Shown one piece after another: positions 34,222 through 56,580 of a DNA stretch of 64,000 nucleotides. The notes beneath the pieces were generated by a model that was not told where the DNA came from, searched no databases, and worked only from the letters and a program-made list of their open reading frames with translations. The number at the start of each line of letters is the position of its first letter. The stretch's first letter is position 1. The stretch spans positions 514,293 to 578,292 of IMG/VR virus record IMGVR_UViG_3300046660_000488. One strand, 5' to 3'. Made by a program: the position numbers and the translations under genes.

Positions 34222-34881
34222 ATGGAACGTTCAGACGACATGCGTAGCCTGCTGGACCTCGTCGAGGCTGATGTGCCCGTCGAGGCCGGTGTGGAGGACA
34301 CGATCTTCGAAGCCTTCAAGGGCTGGAGCACGCTCAGCGAAAGCTACCGCTACGCAGGCAACTGCACCGGGCTGGCGGCCGACGATCTTCACGACATGAT
34401 GGACAAGGCTCGGCAGGTCACCTACTCGACCTTCGTCAAGGCCATTGGTCTCGACCAACTGCGTGAACTGTTCGCCGACTACGGTTGGGGACACCAGCGC
34501 GGTTTCGTCCGCATGAAGACTGATCCGCACATCACCTACTATCGCAGCATCTTCAAGGGCAAGCACTGCTACTACGTCCGCGAGTCCGGCATCGAGTACA
34601 TCTTCGTCGATGACGACAAGCCGAGCGCCGAAATGCAGGTCAAGCCGAACCGGTTCACGATCACCGCCGATGGCGCCGTGATCAAGGGTTTCTCGCGCGG
34701 TGTGTTCAACGGCGCCAAGACCCCCGACAGCCTGAAGATCACGTGGACGTCCACGCCCAGCAGCAAGGCCGCAGAGACGCTGACCCGCATGGTTCGGCAG
34801 TCGAAACTGGAAGAGATCATTTTGGACGACGAGCCGACATCGGCCGAGAACGTCATCGCGCAGCTTAAGCGCTTCCTCTAA
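34222..34881 (+). CDS. Putative virion-associated protein
   Basis: TAAATA at 34211; N-terminal MRSLLDLVE motif. Confidence 0.75.
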   Translation: MERSDDMRSLLDLVEADVPVEAGVEDTIFEAFKGWSTLSESYRYAGNCTGLAADDLHDMMDKARQVTYSTFVKAIGLDQLRELFADYGWGHQRGFVRMKTDPHITYYRSIFKGKHCYYVRESGIEYIFVDDDKPSAEMQVKPNRFTITADGAVIKGFSRGVFNGAKTPDSLKITWTSTPSSKAAETLTRMVRQSKLEEIILDDEPTSAENVIAQLKRFL

Positions 34882-34937
34882 TCCTTTTCGTTGACGAAAT
34901 CGGTTATCGTGTTACTCGTTGGCAAACAGGAGTTCCC

Positions 34938-35315
34938 GTGTCCGATCTCGATCACAGCGCCGTAATTTTCAAGATCAAGACGACCATCCATTCCCTGTCG
35001 GACGAGGATGGCTTCAACCATTACCGCACGCGGAAAATGGTGTCGGAGAGCTTCAGCTTTTCGGATTTGGAAGGCGACGTGCGCGGCACGGTCCTGATGT
35101 TGATGGACCTACCAGACGAACTTCGGAACAAGGTTGTCGTCGGCGGCGTGGAATCGCTTGATCACCTGCCGCAAAATTTCACTAAGGTCAGGTTGTTCGG
35201 TGCCGTTTTCATGCCGTTGGATGGAATCATCCTGCCTAGTCAGCATGGGGTCGCTCAGTGGTTCGCCACGATCAAGCTCGTGTCTGACGGCGACCCTTTG
35301 GCATTTTTCTCGTAA
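34938..35315 (+). CDS. Hypothetical protein
   Basis: SD GGAG, GTG start. Confidence 0.65.
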   Translation: MSDLDHSAVIFKIKTTIHSLSDEDGFNHYRTRKMVSESFSFSDLEGDVRGTVLMLMDLPDELRNKVVVGGVESLDHLPQNFTKVRLFGAVFMPLDGIILPSQHGVAQWFATIKLVSDGDPLAFFS

Positions 35316-35693
35316 TCAGTCGATTTTTTTCAGCAGGGTGACCTGACGCTTCCGCACGCGGCGAGCGATGGTCTCTTGCAGGCTGACAGACGGCCCCGAT
35401 TGCAGGTCGAATTCCTTGCGCGCGAAATGCTTCAGGTACGGCCGGAAAATCTTGAACTTGTCCTTCAAGAAAATGTTGATCGGGATTTGCCGATTGCTAC
35501 CCCACCACCACTCTTCGCCCGACTTCAGGAAGATGCGGCGAAGGTTCTCATCGGGGATCGAGTCGAGCACGTACATCGACAGCAGTTGGCTGTCGGAATT
35601 CTGCACGATTCCGAGGTAGGGTGTTTCCAGAAGCACGCCGTAGCTGAGGAACGGGTACTTCTCAAGAATAGCGGCGATGCGCGCGTCGTCCAT
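35316..35693 (-). CDS. Conserved jumbo-phage protein (EKYPFLSY...WWWGSNRQIPINIFL)
   Basis: Distinctive motif; TAAATA on the minus strand at 35719-35724. Confidence 0.8.
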   Translation of the reverse strand: MDDARIAAILEKYPFLSYGVLLETPYLGIVQNSDSQLLSMYVLDSIPDENLRRIFLKSGEEWWWGSNRQIPINIFLKDKFKIFRPYLKHFARKEFDLQSGPSVSLQETIARRVRKRQVTLLKKID

Positions 35694-35785
35694 GATTCTG
35701 TACAAGCTATTATGCGAGTATTTAGGTCAGAAAAATCTGCTCATTTTCCACTTCGGCGTAGCAACGCACATGGGTAAATAGTTCC

Positions 35786-36373
35786 ATGCGCGATTATATG
35801 AAATTGATGGAAGATTTCGTCACTGGTGAACAAGAAACCAAGTGGGATTTCTGGGACTTTGCAAGGCATCTTGGCCTCGACGAATTCAAAGAGAAGTTCG
35901 ATGATGCCACCATCAACTGGCATAATCGCAACACTCGTACGCCTATTGACCGGATGGTCAAGAACAAGAAAGCCAAGTTGCTTTCCATGCTTCGTCTGTG
36001 GTTCAAGAAGGACGGGCCGCAGATGTACAGCACCCCTTTCGCCACGATGGACGACTTCAAGCAGGCGGCCAACGCGCCGGTCACCATGTGGCGCGGTGGT
36101 GGCGGTGAGTACAATCCGGACTACCCCGGACACCACTGGGTGAGCTTCACCCTCAGCGAGCGCCGGGTGACGACTTTCTCCGAGTACGACGGCACGCGGG
36201 CGACCCGATCCTACATGCTCCCCAAGCGACGCCAATACTGGGTCGTCGAACTGACGATCCCCCTGAGCGAAATCCTGCTTTACCTGCCCAACGGCGGGGA
36301 CGAGGAAGTTATCGTTTCGGCTGAGACAGCCAAGAAGGCCAAGGTGATCAAGCAGGTGACCGTCGATGCGTGA
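35786..36373 (+). CDS. Putative ADP-ribosyltransferase (R-S-E type), virion-targeted
   Basis: TMWRG, WVSFTL, GDEEVIV; TAAATA at 35775; MRDYMKLME N-terminus. Confidence 0.6.
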   Translation: MRDYMKLMEDFVTGEQETKWDFWDFARHLGLDEFKEKFDDATINWHNRNTRTPIDRMVKNKKAKLLSMLRLWFKKDGPQMYSTPFATMDDFKQAANAPVTMWRGGGGEYNPDYPGHHWVSFTLSERRVTTFSEYDGTRATRSYMLPKRRQYWVVELTIPLSEILLYLPNGGDEEVIVSAETAKKAKVIKQVTVDA

Positions 36374-37076
36374 GTGGATCAACCTGTTCGAGGCCGCGCC
36401 CACCGCAGGCACGATTTACTACCACGGCACGCCGTTGGAAGCAGCGGCCAAGGCCATCATGAAGACCGGCCTGAAGGGTGCGGAGGTGCAAGGTCGTGGA
36501 ATGATGGCGCCGGTGGCCGGGCGCGTCTACATGACGCCCAGCCTCGCCTACGCCATCATCTATGCGATTGGTGGCGCGTACGCGGGGCACGAAGCTCCGG
36601 AAAGCATGATCGCGAAATCTCGCTACGGCTATGTGTTCGTCATCGACGGCAACGATCTGGACACGGTTGAGCCCGATGAAGATTCCATCGGCGAATGGCT
36701 GCACAACAACGGTAAGCGAAGCGACGGCGGCAGTTCGTCGTTCGGAAACCGGCGTTTGGGCTCGATCCAATATGAGCCGAAATTCAAGCACGGCGATCCA
36801 CTCTTCCGGCTATGGCACAACGTCAAGAACGCCATGACGCCGCGTCAGTTCGAGTTGACCATGCAGGCGGAGTACGCGGCTTGGGCACACGGCGGAAAGC
36901 GCGCCTTGAAGGTTCTGAGCGATAACGACAAGGCCCTGCTCGTCGCGCAGGGAACCCACGTCCACCACGCCAGCGGCATCATGCCCTCGCAGTGCTGGAA
37001 GCTCGACAAAAAGCGCACTCAGGATTTGGCTGCGGACGGTTCCAATTTCTTCGAGATCGCCACACGGGTCTCATAA
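36366..37076 (+). CDS. Putative ADP-ribosyltransferase fold (H-Y type), virion-targeted
   Basis: YYHGT, I...GLK, VYMTPSLAYAIIYA, YGYVFVI; MREWINLFE N-terminus. Confidence 0.6.
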   Translation: MREWINLFEAAPTAGTIYYHGTPLEAAAKAIMKTGLKGAEVQGRGMMAPVAGRVYMTPSLAYAIIYAIGGAYAGHEAPESMIAKSRYGYVFVIDGNDLDTVEPDEDSIGEWLHNNGKRSDGGSSSFGNRRLGSIQYEPKFKHGDPLFRLWHNVKNAMTPRQFELTMQAEYAAWAHGGKRALKVLSDNDKALLVAQGTHVHHASGIMPSQCWKLDKKRTQDLAADGSNFFEIATRVS

Positions 37077-37085
37077 ATACTCTTC

Positions 37086-37886
37086 ATGACCGCCACGATC
37101 AATGTCTACAAGCTGCCACAAGTCGTCACATTGACCATGGGCGGAAACACGGGAGCCGCACTGATGAACTATCCTATGGTCCGCACTGACTTCAAAGTCA
37201 CGAAGGGTGTGAAGAACGAAATTCTGTTCTTCATTCGCAACGTGGATCGCAAGGTTGTTCAACTTGACGGCACGCCGCGCGCGGTGATCGTTGACACCCG
37301 CGACAACAAGCTGCTGCTCGAACGTGACCTGACGGTCTACGACGCCCCCAAGGGAATCTGGATGCTGTCGGTCTCGGCCGTGGACGCCGAGTTTTGGCCG
37401 CTGGGCTATCTGAAGTACAGCGTCGTCTTCCACCGTGAATCCGACGACGAAAACATCGCCCTCTACACCGACCGCGCCTACGGTCCGGATAGCTCCATCG
37501 AAGTCATCCAAGGCCCCTACCCGTCGCCGCCAGAGGCCCAGACGGTGCTGCTGGCCGACATGACTGAGCCGCAACTGAACACCATGATCAGCGGCTCGTA
37601 TCTGGGCGGCGCCAGCATCGGCAACGTGCTCGGCTATCACACCTTCCAATGGTCGGTCACCAATTTCATCGGGAAGCTGATCGTGCAGGGATCGCTGGAA
37701 CAGCAGCCCGCCGAGCAGGACTCCAACTGGTTCGACGTCAGCACGACGGAATTCGAGGTTGAAGCCCCCGGCAACGGCTCCATCTTCGTGGACAAGACCG
37801 GCCACTATCTGTGGCTGCGGTTCAAGGTCGTCTACGACGTGATGAACACCGGGACGTTCGAGAAGGTCGTCTTCCGTCCGATCTAA
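37086..37886 (+). CDS. Virion structural protein (beta-rich)
   Basis: TAAATA at 37074; beta-strand-rich sequence. Confidence 0.65.
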   Translation: MTATINVYKLPQVVTLTMGGNTGAALMNYPMVRTDFKVTKGVKNEILFFIRNVDRKVVQLDGTPRAVIVDTRDNKLLLERDLTVYDAPKGIWMLSVSAVDAEFWPLGYLKYSVVFHRESDDENIALYTDRAYGPDSSIEVIQGPYPSPPEAQTVLLADMTEPQLNTMISGSYLGGASIGNVLGYHTFQWSVTNFIGKLIVQGSLEQQPAEQDSNWFDVSTTEFEVEAPGNGSIFVDKTGHYLWLRFKVVYDVMNTGTFEKVVFRPI

Positions 37887-37922
37887 ATGGTCAGGAATTT
37901 CCCGACCTGATAAACATGAACG

Positions 37923-38243
37923 ATGAGCTATTGGGGTCCGTTAAAAGTCAGCAACGTTTCGGTCCGCGAGTTGCCGGATGGTCGTGTCCAGTTATTCGTC
38001 CGTGACCACACGTGGTCGCAGCTTTCTTACTGTGACAGTGGCCGATATGATGCGACGAACTGGAACGCCATGCGTACTGACACAGAAATGGGCCAGTGGT
38101 GTTCAAAGAACTTGACCCTTGCGGTGTATGTCGGTGGAGTATTCGATGTGTGCGGTAATGGAAACACTCTGACGTTCTTCAATATGGAAGACGCTGAAAA
38201 GTTTATGGAGAAATGGACTAAGCACAATCACGACGAATACTAA
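37923..38243 (+). CDS. Hypothetical protein
   Basis: 106-aa ORF with lower GC. Confidence 0.6.
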   Translation: MSYWGPLKVSNVSVRELPDGRVQLFVRDHTWSQLSYCDSGRYDATNWNAMRTDTEMGQWCSKNLTLAVYVGGVFDVCGNGNTLTFFNMEDAEKFMEKWTKHNHDEY

Positions 38244-38274
38244 ACGTCGGTGTTTATTTCGTCGTAAATATTTG

Positions 38275-39033
38275 ATGCGTATCCATATTCTCTCTGATCT
38301 CCATTTCGAAAAACACAAGATGGACCCAGACTACGTCCCGCCTGAGTGCGACGTGGTCGTGCTGGCTGGCGACATTTCGCCGGGCCTGCCGGGCATCGAG
38401 TGGGCCAAGGCCACCTTTAGCGTCCCTGTGATCTACGTCATGGGCAATCACGAGTACTGGCATCAGCGCGGCTTCTACAAGATCGTGGACAAGCTGAAGG
38501 CTGCGACCGCAGGGTCCAACGTCCACCTGCTCCAGAACGAGGCGGTGGTCATTGACGGTGTGCGTTTCATCGGCGCCACCTTGTGGGCGGATTTCAACCT
38601 GACCGGCCTTGGACCCTACAGCAAGGTCGTCTGCCATCGCGCGCTGGCGGACTATGACGCAGCGATCCACCTCGACGACGGAACGTTCCTTGGAACCGAC
38701 GAGGCCATGGACGAGCATTTCATGTCGAGGGATTACATCCACACCCAGTTGCGTGAGCAATTTGACGGCAAGACCGTGGTCGTCACCCACTACGGCTGTT
38801 CGCCGAAATCGGTTCATCCGCGCTGGGTGTCTAACCTCGCAACGCCGGGTTACGTCTCCGACCTCGACTACATGATGCACGAGTGTGGGCCGGTCCTATG
38901 GATTCATGGCCACGTCCACGACGCCTTCGACTATCAGGTCGCCGAGACGCGCGTGGTCACCAACCCGCGCGGCTATCCGGCCGAGCGCGAGGCTGGGAAC
39001 GGTTTCATCCGTGAGTTGGTGGTGACGATCTAG
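38275..39033 (+). CDS. Calcineurin-like metallophosphoesterase
   Basis: SDLH, AGDI, GNHE, THY, HGHVH motifs. Confidence 0.92.
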   Translation: MRIHILSDLHFEKHKMDPDYVPPECDVVVLAGDISPGLPGIEWAKATFSVPVIYVMGNHEYWHQRGFYKIVDKLKAATAGSNVHLLQNEAVVIDGVRFIGATLWADFNLTGLGPYSKVVCHRALADYDAAIHLDDGTFLGTDEAMDEHFMSRDYIHTQLREQFDGKTVVVTHYGCSPKSVHPRWVSNLATPGYVSDLDYMMHECGPVLWIHGHVHDAFDYQVAETRVVTNPRGYPAEREAGNGFIRELVVTI

Positions 39034-39632
39034 CTCGTCAGGCCTTCAAGGGATTCGAGGTCGGCGAGGATAGCGTCGATCTCGGCCCGGTCTCTCGCCA
39101 ATTCCTCTGGTGATTTCTGGCGCTTGGGGCGGTCATCCATCCAAGGCGTCGGTGGCATACCATGGACCGGCGGCTTGGGGATCGTGCGTTTCAGATCGAA
39201 CGAGGTGAAGACCTTTCGACCGCGCACGACCTTCACCTGCATCTGGTAGCCAAGGCCATCGAATTTGGCGCCCAGCTTCAGGGCCATGCGGTTGTAAAGC
39301 TCATCGCGCCCAGTGTCGTGGAAGCCGACGAAGCCGATCTGTCCGGGGAACTGGTTCTTGATGAAATGAGCCAGACAGTTGATGGCGTAGCCGAACACCT
39401 TCGTTGCCGAAGCGCCCTGCCCGCCGATGTTGTCGTGACGGCCGACCTTGTCGGGGTTTTCGAGATTGGGGACGTCGGCCGTGAAGGCAAACTCGTAGTA
39501 ATCTCCGCCGCCACCGTCGCGTTGGAACGTGGCGGTATAGGGCACGCCGTTGACCGCGAAGGTCGCCTTTGTCGGGCTATGCCACTGGACGCCTTGGCTG
39601 TCGAAGGCTTCGGTGATCTCTTTGTAACGCAT
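39030..39632 (-). CDS. Putative virion-associated protein
   Basis: TAAATA (minus) at 39638-39643; MRYKEITEA N-terminus. Confidence 0.75.
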   Translation of the reverse strand: MRYKEITEAFDSQGVQWHSPTKATFAVNGVPYTATFQRDGGGGDYYEFAFTADVPNLENPDKVGRHDNIGGQGASATKVFGYAINCLAHFIKNQFPGQIGFVGFHDTGRDELYNRMALKLGAKFDGLGYQMQVKVVRGRKVFTSFDLKRTIPKPPVHGMPPTPWMDDRPKRQKSPEELARDRAEIDAILADLESLEGLTS

Positions 39633-39636
39633 GCCC

Positions 39637-39852
39637 TTATTTAGGGTTGGCGTCCGCAATAATCCGGCGCTCGACTTCAGCCTTGGCTCGCGCCAGACCT
39701 TCGTCATCGCGAAAGCCGATGATCCCGCAGCGAGTGCTGTGGGTCACGCCGACCTTGTAGACCTCGTAGGTCCCTTTCTTCTTGCCGTAGGGGACGCGGA
39801 GCACCCAGTAGTCGCCTTTCTCGAAAGCGATGTCTTTTTCTTGGTAGCTCAA
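39637..39852 (-). CDS. Hypothetical protein
   Basis: Coupled ORF, TTG start. Confidence 0.65.
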   Translation of the reverse strand: MSYQEKDIAFEKGDYWVLRVPYGKKKGTYEVYKVGVTHSTRCGIIGFRDDEGLARAKAEVERRIIADANPK

Positions 39853-40190
39853 GCGGCCCTCCGTGCGGTCAGGATCGTGTGGTTCCGATTGAAATTGGGG
39901 TGTAGCGGCTCACCGACCGGGTAGATGCCGGTGGTGTGCCAGACACCATCGTGCTCGAACACCGGCGCCAAGGCGGTTTCGTCATGGACGAAGTACGAGC
40001 GTTTTCGCTTGGTCGAGCCGTCCGGCATGTCGATCAGGAACGTCGTGGCTTTCTTCCCAGCCGTCGCCGACGTCCCACCCTTGCGGCCGTAGCCTGCGGA
40101 GACGCGACGAAGGCTAGGCCGAAGCACGTTCAGACGCTCCATGGCGTCTTGCACCTTCGCTCGTGCGATGACGCGCTCGTCTTCGGTCAT
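39849..40190 (-). CDS. Hypothetical protein
   Basis: MTEDERV start, coupled. Confidence 0.7.
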   Translation of the reverse strand: MTEDERVIARAKVQDAMERLNVLRPSLRRVSAGYGRKGGTSATAGKKATTFLIDMPDGSTKRKRSYFVHDETALAPVFEHDGVWHTTGIYPVGEPLHPNFNRNHTILTARRAA

Positions 40191-40528
40191 CCGAGCACGC
40201 TGATGTCCCAGCGCATCTTCCGGCCCTCGGTGGTGTACGGCGTCTTGAACGGCACACCAAGGCTGGCGCGGGTGACTTGCTGCTCCGGCGGCAGAGCGAT
40301 GGTCTCCGAACCGTAGGGCTCGATGGTCCACCCGGCGGCCTTCAGCGCGTTGATCAGTTGATCGCGGACGGCGTTGAGGTCGTCGCCCCACACTTGGATG
40401 CCGTGGCGGTTCACTTCATAGCGCGCGTGCAGCGGGTCGCGCTCGATCTCGATGGTCTCGCCATTCTGATCGCGCAGCATGGTCCACAGGGCGCGGCGAA
40501 GCTTGGCTTTCTGGTTGGAGCTTGCCAT
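40187..40528 (-). CDS. Hypothetical protein
   Basis: SD GGAGG, coupled. Confidence 0.7.
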   Translation of the reverse strand: MASSNQKAKLRRALWTMLRDQNGETIEIERDPLHARYEVNRHGIQVWGDDLNAVRDQLINALKAAGWTIEPYGSETIALPPEQQVTRASLGVPFKTPYTTEGRKMRWDISVLG

Positions 40529-40530
40529 GA

Positions 40531-40692
40531 TCAGTTGACCTCCATCCAGTTGCGCTCGTCCGAGCCACGACCGGAGAGCAGAATCTTCGAACCATCGGTG
40601 AAGATGATCTCGACCCAGCTAGAGCCGGTCTCGACGCTTTCGACGGTCTTGCCGACAATTTCTTGGCAGGTTTCGCTGTCTTGGCTGTCCAT
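40531..40692 (-). CDS. Small hypothetical protein (53 aa)
   Basis: Read manually, MDSQDSETCQEIVGKTV...; SD GGAGG. Confidence 0.7.
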   Translation of the reverse strand: MDSQDSETCQEIVGKTVESVETGSSWVEIIFTDGSKILLSGRGSDERNWMEVN

Positions 40693-40762
40693 GTCGGCCT
40701 CCGTACTTCGAAAGAGGTGATCCTTCTATAGTATTGGAAGCACAGTGTCAAGCACAGTTATG

Positions 40763-40933
40763 CTATGTCTTGGGACGCCGCTGAAGCTGCAAAGCGAGGG
40801 CCGCGCTTTGGTCGTGCCAGTCGTCTTGGGCCTTGCGGCGCTGGCGGTCACCCGATTCCTTGACGATCATGACCAGAAGATCACGAAGCTCTTCATCGGT
40901 CAGGACGCTGATTTGCTCGGCAGTGATCGGCAT
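40763..40933 (-). CDS. Small hypothetical protein
   Basis: SD GGAGG; MPITAEQ start. Confidence 0.65.
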   Translation of the reverse strand: MPITAEQISVLTDEELRDLLVMIVKESGDRQRRKAQDDWHDQSAALALQLQRRPKT

Positions 40934-40983
40934 AGGAACCTCCCTGAAAGTTGAAAGGGGCCAGATCGCTCTGACCCCTTCCG

Positions 40984-41517: not shown

Positions 41518-41764
41518 GGTTCTCGAAAACTCCTCTGTCTGGGGTTTTCGAATCCTACCCGCAGAGGTGCTTCGAGAAGAAGCAAAGCCAATAGAGCACA
41601 TCACATGCTTCAAGTCAACAGCACAGATTCACATTCTATACTTTTGCCCTGAACGCCCGTCGATAAGCGACCGGTTACCTCGCGCCACATAATTTTGACG
41701 GCGAATTTTCCGGCTCCTATGGTGGGTTTCTGATTGGTAAACGAGTATCGCCGGAACCCCGACC

Positions 41765-44866: not shown

Positions 44867-44899
44867 AACTCTTGCTGATGTCTGTTGCTAAATAACGTG

Positions 44900-45199
44900 A
44901 TGGGCGATCAGCAAAACTTTCAGCAGATGAGAGAGTTCATCTACCTGACTGAACAACAGGTCTATGCGGACTACGCAGACTTGTTTGAACAGCAGGTGGG
45001 TGAACCTTTGCTCGAAGAACAACAAGAAGTCTTCGAACATCCTATTCTGCATGACTGCCGCGAACTCGTCTTCAAACTAAGAGCCTTCATGGAAAGTGAG
45101 GGCGGTGATTACGCGATGGGTGTTGAGACCGGTATGCAGCGGGCTGCTGAAATGGTCGAGAATATCATCCGCCGCTATGAGAAGGGTGACGATGAGTAA
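44900..45199 (+). CDS. Hypothetical late protein
   Basis: TAAATA at 44889. Confidence 0.75.
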   Translation: MGDQQNFQQMREFIYLTEQQVYADYADLFEQQVGEPLLEEQQEVFEHPILHDCRELVFKLRAFMESEGGDYAMGVETGMQRAAEMVENIIRRYEKGDDE

Positions 45200-45452: not shown

Positions 45453-46834
45453 AAATCGAGCTAAAAGCCGTCAGCAAGAAATCCAAGCTCATCCACATCG
45501 ACGGTGAGCGCGCCGGAATCGTGGACTGGGAATCCCAGTCCATGCCGAACACCTTGAGCGGTCCCGGCCGCAGGGCGTCGTTCTGGTCGGGTTTCGTTCG
45601 CTGGGACGGCCAGAAGCTTGGCCTGAACAAGATCGAGAAGGCGTCGGACATCGTCGCCAAGATCGAGCGCGAGATCGCGCGCCATGAAGCCCAGAAGACG
45701 GCTCCGTCGCTGGAAGAAGCCGGGATGATCTCCCGTCTTGCGAACCGTGCCGTGAACGGCATCAAGTCGGCCGCCGCCGACACCAAGGATCGTTTGGCCT
45801 ACGGGTTTGGTGACCATGGCGCTCTGGGTGAAATCGGACTGCGCTCGGCGACCAAGGAACTGACAAACCAGTGGAGCGTCTATGCGCGTCGGAACGCGCG
45901 GGCTGAGAAAGATCAGTCCTATCTGACGAACCCGAACCTCGAACAACTCGCGGACTTTCTCCAATTTCAGTACGGCTTGACGCTGACGCCAGAGCAGATC
46001 ACTGCGGCGATGAGCGGCAAGAAAGCAGCCCCCGCGAAAGCTGAAGCACCGGCCGTCGCGCCTCAAACCGCGACGGAAGCCATCCTGCAACGTCTTGCGA
46101 TCAAGGCCGTCATCAGCGAGGCGCCGACTATGCCGCCGGTTGATGCTCCGGACGAAGAAGAGCACGAAGCCGGTCCCGCCGACATCACGTTCGACCCCAA
46201 GCAACTGTTCCCGCGTCTGGCGAACATGCTGATGAATGCTGGCCTGTTGAAGGTAGACTTCAAAGGCGGCGTCAGCGTCGGGTCGCTTCACGGCAAAGGC
46301 GCGGAAGAAGAAAATGACGGCCCAGTCGCCGTGACGCCGGAGCAGGCCGCGCAGATCGCATCCAAGATCACCGATGATGGCTATCACCTCGACATGATCA
46401 AGCTGAGCAAGCAGCTTGGCGCGAAAAACGTGTCGCTGGCCCAGATGAACTGGCTCCAGCAGAACATCCACACGCCGATGGACGTTCGCCAAGTCATGCT
46501 GCGTCAGAAGGACGAGAAGACTGACAACCGCGACACCGTAGAGTTGCTGACCACAGTCGCCACGACGATTGCGGATTGCTTCACCAAGCAAGAACTGAAG
46601 GGCAACAACATCACCAGCCTTGGGTCCACCGTGGACGTTGACAAGATGGCGAAGATGCTCAAGGCCGAAAACATCGACGGAACCGTGCTCCAGATCATGG
46701 CCAACGCCGCGAAGGACCCGGACAAATTCGCGGCTCTGCTGATCCGTGAGAACGACGCCGCGACCCGCGCCGTTGCGGGCGTGATCAAAGCGTTCTCGGC
46801 ATCCATGGTGCGTGCCACGAAGGGCAAGAAGTGA
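45449..46834 (+). CDS. Putative virion protein
   Basis: 461-aa ORF in late operon. Confidence 0.75.
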   Translation: MKIELKAVSKKSKLIHIDGERAGIVDWESQSMPNTLSGPGRRASFWSGFVRWDGQKLGLNKIEKASDIVAKIEREIARHEAQKTAPSLEEAGMISRLANRAVNGIKSAAADTKDRLAYGFGDHGALGEIGLRSATKELTNQWSVYARRNARAEKDQSYLTNPNLEQLADFLQFQYGLTLTPEQITAAMSGKKAAPAKAEAPAVAPQTATEAILQRLAIKAVISEAPTMPPVDAPDEEEHEAGPADITFDPKQLFPRLANMLMNAGLLKVDFKGGVSVGSLHGKGAEEENDGPVAVTPEQAAQIASKITDDGYHLDMIKLSKQLGAKNVSLAQMNWLQQNIHTPMDVRQVMLRQKDEKTDNRDTVELLTTVATTIADCFTKQELKGNNITSLGSTVDVDKMAKMLKAENIDGTVLQIMANAAKDPDKFAALLIRENDAATRAVAGVIKAFSASMVRATKGKK

Positions 46835-47595
46835 GCTTTGAGTTCATCAACACCCTATCCGAAAGCCGTCTGATCCCGTCGAAGACATCGTACCGCCAGT
46901 ACGACGCCCAAGACATTTCGGAAATGGTGGCGCTGTATCTGTGCACCCTCTACATTCTGTACTGCGAGCGCGAAAGCCGCGAGACGGCGATCTCCTACGC
47001 CCGCCGCACGCTCCAGTACGGCATCCACTTCGGGACGTGGCACACCGGGGGCACGGACCTCTATGCCCTGCTGCACGGCATCACGGACGGGACAGACATC
47101 GACTTCCGCAATCAGAGCCGCAGCGAGCGTTTTCGCCACCAGCTTCCCATGGACGAAATCCTGATCGTTCGCTGGATTCGCGAACTGAGCCAAGGGTCGA
47201 TCCGTCCGGGCACGCACCGTCAATTGTTCATCCGTCTGGATTTCAACCTCAAGATCGAGAACCAGTCTATCCGGTCGGTTCGCCGTCTGGTCATGGACTG
47301 GAAGGATTTGGCCGAGCCTGAAGCTCGACTGGCCACCACGCGCCTGCTTCAGCTTCTCCGCAACCGCGCGCCGCGCAGCGAATTGCTGGGCACGCTGAAG
47401 GACATGGCCGACCGCCACCATCTGGAAATCAACGGCGCCCGTAACAAAGAAGCGGGCATCCCGAAATACAACGAGCCGCCCAAGGACATCAACGTCCCGG
47501 CGGCAGAGCCGAAGTCTAACCTGCTCCGGAGCCTCGCCACGGTTGGCGCTGGATACGCGGCCGGTCGTTTCATCGGCTCGCGACTGAGGAAGTAA
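46831..47595 (+). CDS. Putative virion structural protein
   Basis: Coupled, late operon; F...LSESRL N-terminus. Confidence 0.75.
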   Translation: MSFEFINTLSESRLIPSKTSYRQYDAQDISEMVALYLCTLYILYCERESRETAISYARRTLQYGIHFGTWHTGGTDLYALLHGITDGTDIDFRNQSRSERFRHQLPMDEILIVRWIRELSQGSIRPGTHRQLFIRLDFNLKIENQSIRSVRRLVMDWKDLAEPEARLATTRLLQLLRNRAPRSELLGTLKDMADRHHLEINGARNKEAGIPKYNEPPKDINVPAAEPKSNLLRSLATVGAGYAAGRFIGSRLRK

Positions 47596-47596
47596 C

Positions 47597-47773
47597 ATGC
47601 GTTGGAAAGAAATCGTCGAAACAGCATCTTGTGGAGCGACCGGGTCGGCGAGCATCGCCACGGCTCCGGGTGGTCTGGGTATGGGCTTTGACCCCAAGGG
47701 GGACAAGGGCATCTACCAGAACAAGAAGAAGCGCAAGAAGACCGACGAAAGCATGCCCATCATCCGTCGATGA
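47597..47773 (+). CDS. Small internal head protein candidate (58 aa)
   Basis: Read manually: MRWKEIVETASCGATGSASIA...; SD GAGGA. Confidence 0.75.
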   Translation: MRWKEIVETASCGATGSASIATAPGGLGMGFDPKGDKGIYQNKKKRKKTDESMPIIRR

Positions 47774-48468: not shown

Positions 48469-48494
48469 TCCAGCACTGACGTAGTCTCAAGATT

Positions 48495-48528
48495 AGCCCC
48501 GGTGGTTCTCCACCGGGGCTTTTTCTTT
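48495..48528 (+). terminator. Intrinsic terminator
   Basis: AGCCCCGGTG/CACCGGGGCT + T tract. Confidence 0.85.
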
Positions 48529-48593
48529 GTCCGTCAAGTTGAGGCGAGCGCAGCTAAATACACAATCAGTGCTGAGGATGCGTTCCTTTTACC

Positions 48594-48740
48594 ATGACGA
48601 TTAATGAAATGTTCGAGAACTCGGGCAACCGCAAGACGATCTGGACGAAGCGTGGGGGTGAACTCTCCAAGCGCTCGACGATGGCTGCTGTCGCACCGCG
48701 AACCAAGTTCGAGCAGGTCAAGGCCGGTGAGCAGAAATGA
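48594..48740 (+). CDS. Small protein (48 aa)
   Basis: Read manually: MTINEMFEN...; TAAATA at 48555; ATGA overlap with next gene. Confidence 0.55.
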   Translation: MTINEMFENSGNRKTIWTKRGGELSKRSTMAAVAPRTKFEQVKAGEQK

Positions 48741-50671: not shown

Positions 50672-50675
50672 AACG

Positions 50676-51086
50676 ATGTATGTTCTGCTCGGTGAGAATC
50701 GTAGCGAGGCAGTCAACCGGTTCCAAGAAAGCTTGGGACCGGTGACGCCGCGCCCTCTTGCCGAGCAGACATTTCGCGTCTTCGAGAAGAAGGGTTTCAT
50801 CGTCGAGCAAGACGGAAAGTACCTGATCGAAGACTCAGTCGGCCAAGCCGACATGCGTACTCAGGCGACCGCAGAGGTCGTCAAAGCTGCTGACGCCACG
50901 ACGCAGGCTCACTCGAAAAGCCGCTCCAAGGGTGGCATGCACCACTTCAACGTCAACTCGTCCAATTTCCAGCGCGCACGGATCGCGAATTCGTGGAGCC
51001 CGCAGATGGCGTCAGTGTTCGCCCCCTCCCTGTTTCAGGCGTTGGGCATGACGAACCCCAATCCCGCCGACGCATCCGACGATTAA
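50676..51086 (+). CDS. Hypothetical protein
   Basis: MYVLLGENR start. Confidence 0.7.
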   Translation: MYVLLGENRSEAVNRFQESLGPVTPRPLAEQTFRVFEKKGFIVEQDGKYLIEDSVGQADMRTQATAEVVKAADATTQAHSKSRSKGGMHHFNVNSSNFQRARIANSWSPQMASVFAPSLFQALGMTNPNPADASDD

Positions 51087-51136
51087 TATTGCCGGGAATA
51101 GAGCCTAAATAGGATAATAACCTATTCGGTCATTCA

Positions 51137-51361
51137 ATGCGCTATCATGAGATTTCCGGCGGGTTCCGTGTTCCGGTTTCCGAGGAAGAACAAGAAATCA
51201 TCAGCTTGATCCAAGAAAAGGATCAAGTAAAGAAGGCTGATCTCGATGAACGTCAGCGCGAAATCGCGCGCCTGATGGTATCGCGGGGTCTCCTCAACCG
51301 TGGGCGCGATGATGACCAAGTTGTTTTGACTTTGAACAGCCCGGACTTGTGGAGAAACTGA
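51137..51361 (+). CDS. Conserved small late protein
   Basis: TAAATA at 51106; MRYHEI N-terminus. Confidence 0.75.
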   Translation: MRYHEISGGFRVPVSEEEQEIISLIQEKDQVKKADLDERQREIARLMVSRGLLNRGRDDDQVVLTLNSPDLWRN

Positions 51362-52203
51362 TGCCTGACGTGAACGCGAATGACGCCGCTGAAATGCAGC
51401 GTTTCATTGACATGATGGAAGGCCGCAATCCCGGCCCGACACCGCTCCAGCGCGGTGGCAACATGCAGCAGCATGCACCTTTGCCTGTGGACGACGGCGG
51501 CGCCTCGGCCATGAAGGACATCCTGTTGGCGATGTACGAAGCAGCCCCTGAACTGCAAACGGCTGGCCGTCACCTGAACGGCGGCGGCGATGACTTCGAT
51601 CCGGTCGGCGCGGCTTATCAGCAGCAGCAGATGGAAGCTGGCGGCGGCTACATCCCGGAAATGGACGAGTACGGCAACGAGAACCCGGCCTACACCCGTC
51701 AGCAGGCGGTTCACGCCGCGCGAGCCGCCCAGTCCTACGCCCCTCCGGCGTTCGATCCGGCTGGCCTGATGGTCGAGCGCGCCAAGGGCGACCGCGAACT
51801 GCGCGAAGCCATGATGACGAGCGTCAACGATGACGGCGTCCGCATCGGCAAGTACCAGATCGTCGTCAACGAGAACGACGCTGGCCTGAAGAGCTTCGAC
51901 ATCACCAACGCCAAGACCGCCGAAGCTATCGCCACCGACCTGACCCTGTACGAAGCCGCGCGCGGCATCGTGCGTCACCTCAACGAAGGCCTGATGATCA
52001 ACAGCCGGGAAATCCGCGAAATCCTGAACACCGAAGCGATCTACGGCCGCTCGCGCCAGAACGCGGCGGAAGCCCGTGAGCGCCAGCGCGTCTACGAGCG
52101 TCGCAACGACCCGAGCAAGGCGAACCTCATGGAAGCTCGCTACAGCGATTCGCTGGCCAAGGCCAAAGCGGCGAAAGCCCGTCTGATTGACCTGACCAAG
52201 TAA
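51361..52203 (+). CDS. Putative virion structural protein
   Basis: SD GGAGA, coupled. Confidence 0.75.
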   Translation: MPDVNANDAAEMQRFIDMMEGRNPGPTPLQRGGNMQQHAPLPVDDGGASAMKDILLAMYEAAPELQTAGRHLNGGGDDFDPVGAAYQQQQMEAGGGYIPEMDEYGNENPAYTRQQAVHAARAAQSYAPPAFDPAGLMVERAKGDRELREAMMTSVNDDGVRIGKYQIVVNENDAGLKSFDITNAKTAEAIATDLTLYEAARGIVRHLNEGLMINSREIREILNTEAIYGRSRQNAAEARERQRVYERRNDPSKANLMEARYSDSLAKAKAAKARLIDLTK

Positions 52204-53879
52204 TGCGTTTTCGGGAGATCATCGCGGAGAAGCGTCGCAACGCTTCGGTGAACAAGAAAGAAAGCGGCCTGTCGCAACTCTTGAAGTACAAGGGGCAGGC
52301 CGACGTCTTCGTGTCTTTCACCAGCGATGTGGGTACTGCGTCCAATCCCACCGAAATCACCCCGCACGACACACAGACCGGCGTCCGCGCCAGAGGCGGC
52401 AACCACAACGCCCGTGGCTCGAAGATCGGCATCAATCCCCAGACCGAATTCGACACCCCGGTGGGCATCTACGCCTATCCGGTGGACTACGTCATCGAGA
52501 AGCAGACGCGGATGGAATTTGCCGCGTCACGCCCGTACATGTACGTATTCCGCGCCCAAGGCAACGTTCTCGATCTGCGCTCCTACACCGACGCCGACTT
52601 GAAGCAAGACGTCGCCAAGCTGATGAAACTCTACGATTTCTCGGAGAGCGAAGTTAAGCGCGCGATGCGTGACGCCACAACCCAGACCCCCGGTGGCCAA
52701 ATCTGGAACATCACCCGGATGGTTTCGATTGCCGTCACGAAGCGTGAAGAAGCCCGCAAGGGCTTCGACAACTACGACGAATACGAGCCGCAGGAAGATG
52801 ACTTCGATTCCTTCGAGGAATACGAAGCCGAGTACATGGACTGGGAGCAGAACAAGCCTAAGTCCAAGGTGAAGACCAAGGGCGACGCCGGGGAGGAAAC
52901 CGCCGCGCCGATGAAATGGAACACCGTCTGGCGAGCGCTCGGATATTCAGCGGTGATCGATCTGGATGGTCTCGGCATCATTCACGAGAACGAAGCCACA
53001 CAGGGCGTGTTCTTCAGCATCAAGTCCATCAAGGCTCTGGAAGTCATCGACAGCATCGACCCACAACCGGAATGGAAACTGACCCGTGTGTGGGCCGACA
53101 AGCCTGAGTTGTTCATCAGCCAGATGCAAAAGGGCAAGATCGCGCTCGAAGACATCATCGAGTTCATGAAAGAGCACGAGTACATGTTCTCGCATGTTCC
53201 GTTCGATGCGTTCCCCAACGATTTCAAGAAGTACATCTTCGCGCATCCGCTTGAATTCTTGAAGCGAAGCTACGCGATGCACCATGTGCCATTCCCTCCG
53301 GCAACCCAGATCATGATCATTGATCACGATCCGAGGCAGGTTCAGGCGTTGCACAAGCCGCTTGCCCGGCCGGTTCTGGCGTATATTGCCAAGAATTTCA
53401 GCCGGTTCGCGAAGGAAGTCCCAGAAGTCATCGACCGGCTCCCTCCCGCACAGCAGGTCGCTGAGATCACCAAGAACCCGGCCCTGATTACCTATCTGCC
53501 GGGGTCACCGACGATGGTTGCGGCGCCGGTTCTGGCGGCGATCATCGACATCGATCCGTCGTTGTTCATGCGGTACTACCATAGCTACGACGCTCCGAAG
53601 ATTCATCCTTCGGTGATCGCTAAATTCTACAAGCAAGTCGTCGTGCCTCGCAAGCACCAAACGCTGGAATTTCTGTCGCTGATCGCGTCGAAGTATCCGG
53701 CCGCGACGCTGGGTGCTTGTCTGGCGGTTACAGACAAAAGGACCGCCCGCGCTTTCTACAAGCTGGCGAGCGGCCCCATGGATGGAAATCTGGTTCAGAA
53801 GGATTGGACGCGGAATACGAGCAAGCCGCCGAGCATGCTGGCGAAGCTGATCCTGAAATACCGCCCCGATCTGGCTTAG
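52203..53879 (+). CDS. Putative injected internal head protein
   Basis: MRFREIIAE N-terminus; GINP...FDTPVGIYAYP and GLGIIH.NE motifs. Confidence 0.75.
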   Translation: MRFREIIAEKRRNASVNKKESGLSQLLKYKGQADVFVSFTSDVGTASNPTEITPHDTQTGVRARGGNHNARGSKIGINPQTEFDTPVGIYAYPVDYVIEKQTRMEFAASRPYMYVFRAQGNVLDLRSYTDADLKQDVAKLMKLYDFSESEVKRAMRDATTQTPGGQIWNITRMVSIAVTKREEARKGFDNYDEYEPQEDDFDSFEEYEAEYMDWEQNKPKSKVKTKGDAGEETAAPMKWNTVWRALGYSAVIDLDGLGIIHENEATQGVFFSIKSIKALEVIDSIDPQPEWKLTRVWADKPELFISQMQKGKIALEDIIEFMKEHEYMFSHVPFDAFPNDFKKYIFAHPLEFLKRSYAMHHVPFPPATQIMIIDHDPRQVQALHKPLARPVLAYIAKNFSRFAKEVPEVIDRLPPAQQVAEITKNPALITYLPGSPTMVAAPVLAAIIDIDPSLFMRYYHSYDAPKIHPSVIAKFYKQVVVPRKHQTLEFLSLIASKYPAATLGACLAVTDKRTARAFYKLASGPMDGNLVQKDWTRNTSKPPSMLAKLILKYRPDLA

Positions 53880-54202
53880 GCCGCCTTGGCGAAGAGCTTT
53901 TCGTAGGTCATCCAGTCGAACCGGCTGACGTTTTCGTAGAAATCGCCCGGCAGGGTGGCGATGTAATCGCGCACGGTCTGCTCCATGTCTTCCGGCACGC
54001 CGACGAACAGCGTCAGTTGGTAGGTCGTAGCGATCTCGCGCACGTCGCAGGCCGGAGCTTCGGTCAGGGCCTTGGCTTCGTCGAGGCGGCCGGTGAGGAA
54101 ATCCTTCGCGTCATTCACGTCCAGCAGGCAGATGCGGCAGACGGCGTCCAGCAGAGCAATCATGCGAGGGGTCGGGTAGTAGAACTTAACGTCGCGCGAC
54201 AT
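53876..54202 (-). CDS. Hypothetical protein
   Basis: SD GGAGA; MSRDVKFY start. Confidence 0.7.
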   Translation of the reverse strand: MSRDVKFYYPTPRMIALLDAVCRICLLDVNDAKDFLTGRLDEAKALTEAPACDVREIATTYQLTLFVGVPEDMEQTVRDYIATLPGDFYENVSRFDWMTYEKLFAKAA

Positions 54203-54340
54203 GAATGGTTCTCCGTGCTGTTCCGATGACCTCAAGCTACCACAATATTTTCAATTTGCAAGTGGAAATGTTGAATCAGAAGAGAAAAGATCGCCAGCAT
54301 AAATACAACACACAGACTGTGTTGGCTGCTTGGAGTAATC

Positions 54341-54628
54341 ATGGCTATCCGCGAGATTCGCGAACGAGCAATTCAGAAGCTCAAACCACTGAACGAACGT
54401 ATGGATCGTCAGTATGGGGTGAAGCTCGACCTGAATTCAGATCGCGACCATCTTCGGACGGTTTATGAGCACTACAAAGCTAAGCGTGAAACTATTCGCG
54501 CGAAGCTTGGCGAAGCAGCCGCCATCACAGACCCCGACTATGCCAAGGCCGTCTTCATCAGCGAGGCCGCCCGGCTATTTCTGCGGGAAATTTCGCCGAA
54601 GCGCATCCGCAAGAAAACCAAGAAATAA
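54341..54628 (+). CDS. Small late protein
   Basis: TAAATA at 54300, SD GGAG. Confidence 0.75.
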   Translation: MAIREIRERAIQKLKPLNERMDRQYGVKLDLNSDRDHLRTVYEHYKAKRETIRAKLGEAAAITDPDYAKAVFISEAARLFLREISPKRIRKKTKK

Positions 54629-54639
54629 CAGGAGCCATT

Positions 54640-56166
54640 ATGATTAAGAAGACCGTGAAGGAAACGGCTCAGGCCAAGGGTCTGGCTTTCCTCATCGAAA
54701 GCGAACTGGACAAGGCTGAGGTCGTCATCGCGGCCAAGGGCATCCTGTCCAAGCTGCAAGGCATGGCCGAAGACCTCGCCAAGATCGAGGCCGACGACAT
54801 CATGCCGATCCTCGACAACATGCGTCTGACCTTCGGGCCGGAACTGACCGACAGCTTCAACGACATCACGACGGCGAAAATTCGTCAGACGATGGAAGCT
54901 GTGAAGGGCGCCAAGGAAGCCATCACCCGCGAAGTCGGCCGTCTGGAGAACACGGTCAACGGCGAGCCCACCAACGATCTGGGCATGGGCGACGAAGGCA
55001 TGGGTATGGATGGCGACATGGCTGACGGTAGCTTCGATGCTCCGGAAGACAATGATCTCGACGTTCCGCCGATGCCTGACGCGGCTGACCCGGACGCGGT
55101 TCCGACCGCTGATCTCGCCGCTGGCGGCGAAGAAGGCCCCGACGCCGGTGGTCTGGCCGACGAACTGGACGCTGCTTTCGACAAGGAAGCGACCGCCGGT
55201 GGTGCTGCTGGCCGCGCCCGCAAGGAAAGCGCCATGGTCTCGCGCAACGTCAAGGCTCTTCGCGAATCGAAGAACCCGGACATGCTGATCTACGCTGCGT
55301 TCAAGCGCACGATGAAGGAAAGCCGCAAGATCGTCGAGTCCGCTCGCGCTGTGGCCAAGGCATTCGCCATCGACTTCGATGACGTCGCCACCATCGTGAA
55401 GGAACACGCTGTCAAGGAAAGCAAGACTCGTAAGGACGAGAAGGGCCGCAAGGACAAGAACGACGACCGCTCCGAGGATCGCAAGACCAAGAAGCGCGAA
55501 CGCCCCACGGACATCGACGAAGGCAAGACCTTCAAGGACGAGGAAGGCAAGACGTCGAAGAACAAGGACCGTTCGGAAGACCGCGCCACCAAGAAGCGCG
55601 AGCGTCCGAAGGACATCGACGAAGGCAAGACCTTCAAGGACGAAGACGGCAAGACCGACAAGAACAAGGATCGCTCCGAGGATCGCAAGACCAAGAAGCG
55701 CGAACGTCCTTCGGACCTCGACGAAGCCAAGAAGTCTTTTAAGGCTGGCGGCATCGCGGGTAAGCCGAGCGATGCACCGGTCGAAGAAAGCGTCCTGAAC
55801 CGTTTTCAGCCCCGTAAGGGTCTGAGCGACTTCCGCACCCGTCGCATCGACGTGGTGTCACAGGAAGACGGTACGGCTCGCGCCGTGAAGGATTACAACG
55901 ACCACGTCAATCGCACGATGGAAGTGCCGTATATCTACGCGATGGTGGACGGCGAAGCTCGCCAGTTCAACAGCCATTCCGGCGATCCCTTCATCATCCG
56001 CGTGTCGAAGACGATGCCGGAGCTTGTGAAGCGCTGGAACGGTGAAAACCTCAGCCCGCGTTGGCAGGTGAAAGTCGAGAATGGACAGGGCGTTGTGCCG
56101 CCCGACGTCAAGTCCGGCTTCATCGACGCTCCGGGTTATCGTTTCCTGCCACAACGGCCGCGATAA
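54640..56166 (+). CDS. Prohead core/scaffold-like protein with internal repeats
   Basis: SD GGAG; LIESE..KAEVVIAAK motif, acidic linker, 34-aa repeats. Confidence 0.7.
   Translation: MIKKTVKETAQAKGLAFLIESELDKAEVVIAAKGILSKLQGMAEDLAKIEADDIMPILDNMRLTFGPELTDSFNDITTAKIRQTMEAVKGAKEAITREVGRLENTVNGEPTNDLGMGDEGMGMDGDMADGSFDAPEDNDLDVPPMPDAADPDAVPTADLAAGGEEGPDAGGLADELDAAFDKEATAGGAAGRARKESAMVSRNVKALRESKNPDMLIYAAFKRTMKESRKIVESARAVAKAFAIDFDDVATIVKEHAVKESKTRKDEKGRKDKNDDRSEDRKTKKRERPTDIDEGKTFKDEEGKTSKNKDRSEDRATKKRERPKDIDEGKTFKDEDGKTDKNKDRSEDRKTKKRERPSDLDEAKKSFKAGGIAGKPSDAPVEESVLNRFQPRKGLSDFRTRRIDVVSQEDGTARAVKDYNDHVNRTMEVPYIYAMVDGEARQFNSHSGDPFIIRVSKTMPELVKRWNGENLSPRWQVKVENGQGVVPPDVKSGFIDAPGYRFLPQRPR
55417..55725 (+). 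repeat. Three tandem 102-bp (34-aa) charged repeats
   Basis: GAAGGCAAGACC at 55519 and 55621; unit EGKTFKDE.GK..KNKDRSEDR.TKKRERP.DID. Confidence 0.9.
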
Positions 56167-56172
56167 ACAACA

Positions 56173-56202
56173 AAGGGGCCGCTCACCAGCGGCCCCTTCT
56201 TT
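56173..56202 (+). terminator. Intrinsic terminator
   Basis: AAGGGGCCGCT/AGCGGCCCCTT + CTTT. Confidence 0.75.
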
Positions 56203-56220
56203 CTATGAGTGCTGGAACCC

Positions 56221-56580
56221 ATGTACCTATTTGAACTCTTCGACGAACAGTCCTTGGACGTGACAGACAACATCAAGTCGTCGCTGATGGACATCCTGAC
56301 GCCGCTCGTGGCGTCGGAAGTGCCATTTGTCACGTTCAACCAGTTGATCGACAAGATGAACAGCAGCGGTACAGGTCTGTCCATCGACCGCGCTCTGATC
56401 ATGGACCTGCTGGACCCGGATAAGGTCAAGATGGTCAGCAAGATCGAGGGCGACCGCATCTACCTGACGTCGCCGGACGGCGCCGACCGCTCAGTGACGA
56501 AAGACGACGCTGTGAAGGATCAGGAGCACGTCTCGAAGATGGCCACGGACCAAGCGTCCAAGTCCATGGACAGCCTCTAA
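56221..56580 (+). CDS. Conserved late protein
   Basis: MYLFELFDE N-terminus. Confidence 0.75.
   Translation: MYLFELFDEQSLDVTDNIKSSLMDILTPLVASEVPFVTFNQLIDKMNSSGTGLSIDRALIMDLLDPDKVKMVSKIEGDRIYLTSPDGADRSVTKDDAVKDQEHVSKMATDQASKSMDSL

What the first reader, a model, noticed from the sequence alone, without database searches (positions are those of the whole stretch)
34240..56250. Shared N-terminal M-x-x-x-E-phi-x-E-like motif suggests capsid-targeting and protease-cleavage tags on many proteins
SEEN: MRSLLDLVE (34240), MRDYMKLME (35786), MREWINLFE (36366), MRYKEITE (39632, minus), MRWKEIVE (47597), MTINEMFE (48594), MRYHEI (51137), MRFREIIAE (52203), MAIREIRE (54341) and MYLFELFDE (56221). Nearly all lie behind TAAATA boxes or in late operons. 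KNOWN: T4 internal proteins carry a ~10-aa capsid-targeting sequence (MKTYQEFIAE type) removed by the gp21 protease after [ILV]-x-E. INFERENCE: a set of otherwise unrelated cargo proteins, including enzymes, packaged and injected with the DNA.
Basis: partly seen in the sequence, partly recalled or inferred. Interest (0 to 1): 0.6.

Follow-up and report, generated by a model that had tools for sequence, protein, structure and literature searches.

The report
Capsid-targeting tags in a huge phage
A 578-kb T4-related phage puts a short, cleavable N-terminal address tag on about 40 mostly unrelated late proteins, several of them host-attack or anti-defence enzymes; this is most likely the T4 way of loading proteins into the head, used on a much larger scale.

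Summary
All ten N-termini exist as quoted. The motif runs through the whole genome, a complete 578,292-bp virus record. About 37 of 781 predicted proteins start with M-R, a hydrophobic or aromatic pattern, then hydrophobic-x-Glu. About 7 are expected from internal sequence windows (p 4e-16).

There are two interchangeable variants. The protein bodies are mostly unrelated, and codons at conserved positions vary synonymously, so the signal is in the peptide.

The genome has a T4-type head module in T4 gene order, with an S77 prohead protease. It also has a gp55-like sigma factor. Tags are tightly linked to TAAATA late-promoter boxes (odds ratio 48).

Tagged proteins include five ART-PolyVal ADP-ribosyltransferases, three GNATs, a SprT-like protease and an Acb1 anti-CBASS enzyme.

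In the cultured relative Atu_ph07, 21 of 23 tagged proteins are in the published virion mass-spectrometry list, against about 20% of all genes.

Cleavage, sufficiency of the tag and injection remain untested. I rate it a new variant of the known T4 capsid-targeting system.

The parts
34211..34216 (+). TAAATA late-promoter box, 5 nt before the ATG at 34222
34222..34881 (+). Late gene (219 aa, no family). Variant-B tag at 34240-34266, six residues after the probable start.
35775..35780 (+). TAAATA box, 5 nt before the ATG at 35786
35786..36373 (+). Tagged late gene (195 aa, no family). Variant-B tag at 35786-35812.
36366..37076 (+). Tagged gene (236 aa). Variant-B tag at 36366-36392. The body has an ADP-ribosyltransferase fold. 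In homologs the tag ends just before a conserved M-A-x-P.
39638..39643 (-). TAAATA box, 5 nt before the ATG at 39632
39030..39632 (-). Tagged gene (200 aa). Variant-A tag at 39609-39632. Homolog of Atu_ph07 virion proteins gp483 and gp53.
44900..45199 (+). Late gene (99 aa) with TAAATA at 44889-44894. Variant-B tag begins at residue 10 (44927-44953).
47597..47773 (+). 58-aa ORF starting with a variant-A tag behind a Shine-Dalgarno site. In relatives the same peptide is an internal or C-terminal part of a larger virion protein and follows a hydrophobic-x-Glu site there.
51137..51361 (+). 74-aa gene with the first half of the variant-A tag. TAAATA at 51106-51111. Homolog of Atu_ph07 gp46 (found in virions by MS) and of a PHROG virion protein.
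52203..53879 (+). 558-aa gene inside a late operon. Variant-A tag at 52203-52229, the closest match to the T4 tag.
56221..56580 (+). 119-aa gene with an N-terminus like the T4 Alt propeptide. Its N-terminus is kept in the 607-kb relative. Positional counterpart of PA5oct gp238 (found in virions by MS).
48594..48740 (+). Weak match, no relatives. Not accepted as tagged.
54341..54628 (+). Its ortholog in the 607-kb relative has no tag. Not accepted as tagged.

Best explanation
The motif is a capsid-targeting propeptide of the T4 kind. A stretch of 8-11 residues holds a basic residue at position 2, hydrophobic or aromatic residues spaced as on one face of a helix, and a final hydrophobic-x-Glu. 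It would dock the newly made late protein onto the scaffolding core of the prohead. The S77 (gp21-type) prohead protease would then cut after the Glu, so the mature protein stays inside the head with the DNA. The enzymes among the cargo (ADP-ribosyltransferases, acetyltransferases, a SprT-like protease, Acb1) would then enter the host with the DNA and act before any phage gene is expressed. Shown here: the tag exists, is enriched, acts at the peptide level, is modular and swappable, and is tied to late promoters. The protease and a T4-ordered head module are present. Tagged proteins of a cultured relative are virion proteins. Inferred only: binding to the core, cleavage, location inside the head rather than elsewhere in the virion, and ejection.
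For: 1. Enrichment. 2. Peptide-level signal: Arg, Glu and Ile/Leu codons vary synonymously, and tagged genes also occur behind Shine-Dalgarno sites inside operons. 3. Modularity: 30 of 40 tagged bodies are singletons by BLASTP. Orthologs in a 607-kb relative that shares only 232 of 781 proteins keep a tag but swap the variant. In 59 homologs of the 36366 protein the tags vary freely, most of them ending just before a conserved M-A-x-P. Three untagged homologs start exactly there, and one carries a near-copy of the T4 tag. 4. Machinery: S77 protease at 86.6 bits with conserved catalytic His, Ser and Asp; capsid protein at 304 bits; gene order portal, small core protein, core protein, protease, scaffold, capsid protein as in T4. 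The T4 gp23 cleavage site aligns with L-L-E|S in this capsid protein. 5. Likeness to T4 substrates: the internal-protein tag is quoted in PMC8442874, and gp24, gp22, gp21, gp67 and Alt were read from NC_000866. In T4, residues 4 and 7 direct targeting and residues 8 and 10 direct processing (PMC9026906). Variant B has an aromatic residue at position 4 and Leu/Ile at position 7. 6. Late expression: odds ratio 48 with TAAATA boxes and a gp55-like sigma factor. 7. Experiment in a relative: 21 of 23 tagged Atu_ph07 proteins are in its virion MS list against about 20% overall (p 6e-13; by family 9 of 11, p 2e-5). Three window proteins have MS-detected homologs there. 8. Cargo families are those known from injected polyvalent proteins (PMC7824862).
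Against: There are no data on this phage itself: no virions, no N-terminal peptides, and no RNA run was listed. The mass spectrometry in Atu_ph07 shows presence in virions, not location in the head, and cannot show cleavage. Thirteen of the 23 Atu_ph07 proteins belong to one paralog family. Some tags lack the final Glu (51137) or end in Asp, which blocks processing in T4. Other relatives with similar capsid proteins (Phosso, G002, G004) lack the promoter-plus-tag DNA pattern; their proteins were not scanned for the peptide. PA5oct has only about four tag-like N-termini. A complex prediction of protease with tag could not be run.
Confidence: 0.78

Rival explanations
1. The tag marks virion proteins in general. 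It would be an assembly or maturation propeptide of structural parts, in the head or elsewhere, and not injected cargo. The proteins would stay with the particle or be degraded as core material.
For: The small core proteins next to the protease carry similar N-termini. Several window proteins are small proteins of unknown function in a block syntenic with PA5oct structural genes. The MS data give no location.
Against: At least ten tagged proteins are enzymes with no structural role: ART-PolyVal, GNAT, SprT-like and Acb1. Large late structural genes with the same promoter type carry no tag. In T4 the same tag serves both core proteins and ejected proteins, so this reading overlaps with the main one rather than replacing it.
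Confidence: 0.13
2. The shared start is a nucleotide-level signal. It would be an initial transcribed or translated sequence needed by leaderless late mRNAs, or part of a mobile promoter cassette, and the peptide would be a by-product.
For: Sixty-three genes have TAAATA 4-6 nt before the ATG, and 25 of the 37 tagged genes are of this kind.
Against: Conserved residues use several synonymous codons, and hydrophobic positions switch between Ile, Leu and Phe codons. Thirty-one genes with the same promoter arrangement have no tag, and twelve tagged genes lack it. Relatives place the tag 2-8 residues after the start. Atu_ph07 has the tag without the abutting promoter.
Confidence: 0.03
3. The motif is another kind of N-terminal signal, such as a degradation tag, a membrane-binding helix or a chaperone handle, and has nothing to do with the capsid.
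For: Short amphipathic N-terminal helices serve many purposes. The AF2 model shows only a short, low-confidence helix at residues 5-9.
Against: This does not explain the invariant Glu at the end, the match to known gp21 substrates, or the presence of tagged proteins in virions of the relative.
Confidence: 0.05

Closest known systems
[quoted passage not shown]
   Same: An N-terminal tag of about 10 residues on unrelated proteins. Hydrophobic or aromatic determinants followed by hydrophobic-x-Glu. A gp21-family protease and a scaffold core encoded in the same gene order. Late expression. An ADP-ribosyltransferase among the cargo.
   Different: The tag starts M-R rather than M-K-T and comes in two interchangeable variants. 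There are about 40 carriers instead of about 9. The cargo is dominated by enzyme families typical of polyvalent proteins and includes Acb1. In most carriers the late promoter directly abuts the start codon.
Polyvalent proteins of phages and conjugative elements (Iyer et al. 2017, as cited in PMC7824862)
   Same: The same domain repertoire (ART-PolyVal, GNAT, SprT-like metallopeptidase, enzymes that degrade nucleotide signals), thought to enter the cell with the DNA.
   Different: Here each domain is a separate small protein with its own address tag, not one giant multidomain protein.
Ejection proteins of phiKZ-like giant phages such as SPN3US (PMC5694885, PMC10052503)
   Same: Many head-internal proteins are processed after Glu by a related prohead protease.
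   Different: Those phages use A/S-x-E sites and mostly long propeptides. No short shared targeting tag is defined, and their capsid and replication modules differ.

Membership tests
T4-type capsid targeting sequence | Short propeptide (10-19 residues) at the N-terminus of otherwise unrelated proteins | tested here: met
   The tag occupies residues 1-9 in 31 of 37 cases. Thirty of 40 bodies are singletons by BLASTP.
T4-type capsid targeting sequence | Ends in the gp21 cleavage motif, hydrophobic-x-Glu | tested here: met
   Present in almost all tags. The boundary is conserved across 59 homologs of one cargo protein. Exceptions: 51137, and one tag that ends in Asp.
T4-type capsid targeting sequence | Targeting determinants at positions 4 and 7 (Tyr and Phe in T4) | tested here: met
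   Variant B has F/Y/W/L at position 4 and L/I at position 7. Variant A has them one position earlier (PMC9026906).
T4-type capsid targeting sequence | The phage encodes a gp21-family protease and a scaffold core | tested here: met
   PF03420 at 86.6 bits, conserved catalytic residues, T4 gene order.
T4-type capsid targeting sequence | Tagged proteins are found in virions | tested here: inconclusive
   Not testable for this phage. In the relative Atu_ph07, 21 of 23 tagged proteins are in the published virion MS list.
T4-type capsid targeting sequence | The tag is removed by the protease and is sufficient to package a foreign protein | not testable with these tools
   Needs N-terminal proteomics and reporter fusions.
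ADP-ribosyltransferase superfamily (protein of window 36366-37076) | ART fold with a conserved His, Tyr and acidic triad | tested here: inconclusive
   AF2 pLDDT is 92. All top structural matches are ART-fold proteins, but with middling scores (best Z 8.7; Foldseek E above 0.01). H20, Y55 and the D-E-D at 104-106 are invariant. No Pfam match.

The most novel reading that the evidence does not exclude
These huge phages carry a tag-addressed arsenal of roughly 40 separately encoded effectors. It includes an anti-CBASS nuclease, several ADP-ribosyltransferases and acetyltransferases, and it is pre-loaded in the head and delivered at time zero. In effect this is a polyvalent protein split into individually packaged parts. 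The tag would then serve as a sequence-only predictor of injected proteins in uncultivated T4-superfamily phages.
Probability: 0.5. Interest if true: 0.75.

Novelty: new variant of a known kind. Interest (0 to 1): 0.6.

Why it matters
Which proteins a phage injects along with its DNA is known for very few phages, and finding out needs purified virions. If this tag works as in T4, it gives a sequence-only list of packaged proteins for a whole clade of uncultivated phages of 0.4-0.6 Mb. That list is rich in candidate counter-defence enzymes. Acb1 delivered ready-made would blunt CBASS signalling before transcription begins. The roughly 25 tagged proteins without any known family become prime candidates for new host-takeover or anti-defence functions. 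The tag could also be used to load foreign proteins into such capsids, as is done with T4.

Tried and rejected
1. Near-identical DNA in the cultured-phage collection: none.
It was useful only for flagging two large relatives.
3. Relatives of the 558-aa protein in viral contigs: none.
4. PA5oct as a proteomic test: only about four tag-like N-termini, all MS-positive. The sample is too small and was chosen after the fact.
5. A hairpin around the TAAATA boxes is no more frequent than at random positions.
6. The promoter-plus-tag DNA pattern is absent from Phosso, G002, G004 and Atu_ph07. Atu_ph07 nevertheless has the peptide tag.
7. RNA runs to test transcript starts: none was listed.
This gives no verdict.
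9. Protein-atlas leads for 52203 and 39030 scored too low to name a family.
Full report
**Context.** The window is the last 64 kb of a complete virus record of 578,292 bp with direct terminal repeats and 59% G+C. My own codon-usage gene caller finds 781 genes with a median length of 155 aa and 87% coding density. The first version of the caller knew nothing of the motif or the promoter and already gave the results below. A later version added a bonus for promoter-adjacent starts, and the counts were unchanged.

**The observation.**
- Each of the ten quoted peptides is present at its coordinate.
- The strict pattern M-R-x-x-E-hydrophobic starts 18 of 781 proteins but follows only 1 of 3,508 internal methionines.
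- At the DNA level, 18 of its 28 six-frame occurrences are predicted gene starts.
- Listing all M-R starts shows two variants. Variant A is M-R, then an aromatic or small residue, x, Glu or Gln, Ile/Leu/Phe, one or two residues, Glu. Variant B is M-R, Asp or Glu, an aromatic residue or Leu, Ile or Met, x, Leu or Ile, x, Glu.
- With both cores allowed to start within the first ten residues, 37 of 781 N-termini match, against 0.88% of internal windows (p 4e-16). Thirty-one of the 37 start at residue 2.

**Peptide or nucleotide signal.** Arg is encoded by CGC, CGT, CGA or AGA, Glu by GAA or GAG, and the hydrophobic positions by Ile, Leu and Phe codons. Several tagged genes sit inside operons behind ordinary ribosome-binding sites (47597, 52203, 36366). 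The conservation is therefore at the protein level.

**Modularity.**
- After removing the first 14 residues, 30 of 40 tagged proteins are singletons by BLASTP. The few paralog groups mix variants A and B.
- I fetched the whole of a 607,744-bp relative whose capsid protein is 85% identical. It shares only 232 of 781 proteins, at a median identity of 43%, yet has 39 tagged N-termini of 854 (p 2e-16). Many of these have a two-residue prefix.
- Orthologs keep a tag but change the variant. The protein of window 36366 has variant B here and variant A there.
- A word search with that protein returned 75 metagenomic homologs. Of these, 59 were aligned (alignment A1). Most carry an N-terminal tag of free sequence ending in hydrophobic-x-Glu directly before a conserved M-A-x-P. 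Three homologs without a tag begin exactly at that Met. A few carry two tags in tandem. One carries a tag that differs from the T4 tag at three positions.

**Machinery.**
- The genome contains a Peptidase_S77 prohead protease (86.6 bits) and a Gp23 capsid protein (304 bits).
- The gene order is portal, 81-aa protein, 333-aa acidic protein, protease, 415-aa coiled-coil scaffold, capsid protein. This is the T4 order 20-67-68-21-22-23.
- The catalytic His, Ser and Asp of gp21 align. The T4 gp23 maturation site aligns with L-L-E|S in this capsid protein.
- A gp55-like late sigma factor is present (E 3e-6).

**Comparison with T4.**
- The internal-protein tag is quoted in PMC8442874.
- From the T4 genome I read the N-termini of gp24, gp22, gp21, gp67 and Alt. 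All contain hydrophobic-hydrophobic-x-Glu within ten residues.
- The review PMC9026906 states that residues 4 and 7 of the T4 tag direct targeting, that residues 8 and 10 direct processing, and that Asp at position 10 blocks cutting but not targeting. Variant B places an aromatic residue at 4 and Leu or Ile at 7. Variant A does the same, shifted by one.
- PMC5694885 confirms cutting after Glu, including I-T-E at residue 6 of Alt.

**Promoters.**
- TAAATA occurs 180 times, more often than any other hexamer of the same composition. In 63 cases an ATG follows after 4-6 nt, and in 40 cases after exactly 5 nt.
- Tag and abutting promoter are strongly associated: 25 genes have both, 12 the tag only, 31 the promoter only, 713 neither (odds ratio 48, p 7e-23). 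Most tag-only genes lie directly downstream of a tagged late gene.
- Large late genes of 3,275, 1,156 and 694 aa have the promoter but no tag.

**Cargo.** Pfam matches above the curated cut-offs are:
- ART-PolyVal in five proteins;
- GNAT acetyltransferase in three;
- SprT-like in one;
- Acb1 anti-CBASS in one, at 127 bits.

Sixteen tagged genes lie within 25 kb, at genome positions 462-487 kb. Inside the window no Pfam family was found. The 36366 protein folds with pLDDT 92, with only residues 1-10 uncertain. All of its structural neighbours are ADP-ribosyltransferase folds, at modest scores.

**Experimental evidence from relatives.** The nearest cultured phages by capsid protein are Phosso (77%), Atu_ph07 (65%) and PA5oct (63%).

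*PA5oct.*
- Its GenBank record flags proteins detected in virions. Window 35-63 kb is syntenic with PA5oct 144-163 kb, where nearly all small genes are flagged.
- The four PA5oct proteins with tag-like starts are all flagged, including the one at the gp67 position.

*Atu_ph07.*
- I fetched the whole genome and found 26 pattern matches, of which 23 are credible. Eleven of them are consecutive genes.
- Table S5 of PMC6102473 lists the virion proteins found by ESI-MS/MS.
- I matched proteins to that table by molecular weight to 0.01-0.03 kDa. For 16 of them I also checked GenBank accession order, which gave a constant offset to the paper's gp numbers within each region; a 17th (gp206) was placed by its position next to gp207. 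Four rest on weight alone.
- By this mapping 21 of 23 tagged proteins are in the list, against about 20% of all genes (p 6e-13). Counted by family the figure is 9 of 11 (p 2e-5).
- Three window proteins have homologs in the list. The 39030 protein matches gp483 and gp53, the 51137 protein matches gp46, and the 58-aa 47597 product matches the C-terminal end of gp53.
- In gp53, and in the fused ortholog of the 607-kb relative, that peptide follows an internal hydrophobic-x-Glu site. Cleavage there would release the same mature peptide that tag removal would release here.

**What remains open.** Cleavage, binding to the core, location in the head and ejection are inferences. The MS data come from a relative and say nothing about N-termini. 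Thirteen of the Atu_ph07 proteins are paralogs. My gene calls are home-made, although the Atu_ph07 and PA5oct starts agree with the deposited annotation.

**Verdict.** This is a real and strongly non-random feature. It is best read as a T4-type capsid-targeting and maturation tag used on an unusually large and enzyme-rich set of proteins. The principle is known. The scale, the two variants, the promoter arrangement and the cargo are new.

Noticed in passing
window 34211-34224, 35775-35788, 37074-37088, 38265-38277, 39630-39643(-), 44889-44902; genome-wide 63 sites: The T4-type late-promoter box TAAATA sits 4-6 nt (mostly 5) before the ATG, with no room for a ribosome-binding site. If transcripts start where T4 late transcripts do (from memory, about 6 nt after the box), these late mRNAs would be leaderless. 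The same arrangement is seen in the 607-kb and 543-kb relatives. It is not seen in Phosso, Atu_ph07, G002 or G004.
   Followed up: partly
window 46831-47773: Two ORFs in different frames (254 aa and 58 aa, the stop nearly touching the next start) correspond to one fused 313-aa protein in the 607-kb relative. The 58-aa part also corresponds to the C-terminal end of Atu_ph07 gp53. After its tag, the small peptide resembles the segment of the capsid protein that follows its maturation site.
   Followed up: partly
genome 137774-138298 (locus L007:1774-2298), outside the window: An Acb1 anti-CBASS phosphodiesterase (127 bits) carries the tag. This suggests it is delivered ready-made with the DNA.
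   Followed up: partly
genome 462000-487000 (loci L014, L015), just upstream of the window: A dense island of 16 tagged genes in 25 kb. Several are ART-PolyVal or GNAT proteins, and few have counterparts in the 607-kb relative. It looks like a fast-evolving cargo locus.
   Followed up: partly
window 39030-39632(-): The Atlas structural neighbours of this protein include DUF6934 phage proteins and the N-terminal part of T-even Alt-like ADP-ribosyltransferases (TM about 0.55). This hints at a shared domain beyond the short tag. It is a lead only.
   Followed up: no
window 35316-63441: This block is collinear with PA5oct 144.5-162.8 kb: a virion protein, primase, DnaB-like helicase, a run of small virion proteins, an exonuclease and ribonucleotide reductase. 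Replication genes are thus embedded between late structural genes in both phages.
   Followed up: partly
alignment A1 (homologs of window 36366-37076): Most tagged homologs have a Met directly after the predicted cleavage Glu, and untagged homologs start at that Met. The tag may have been added upstream of an original start codon, or both a tagged and an untagged form may be made from one gene.
   Followed up: no
protein P0069: One tagged homolog lies on a contig of 869,618 bp, larger than any relative examined here. I did not check whether that contig is a phage.
   Followed up: no
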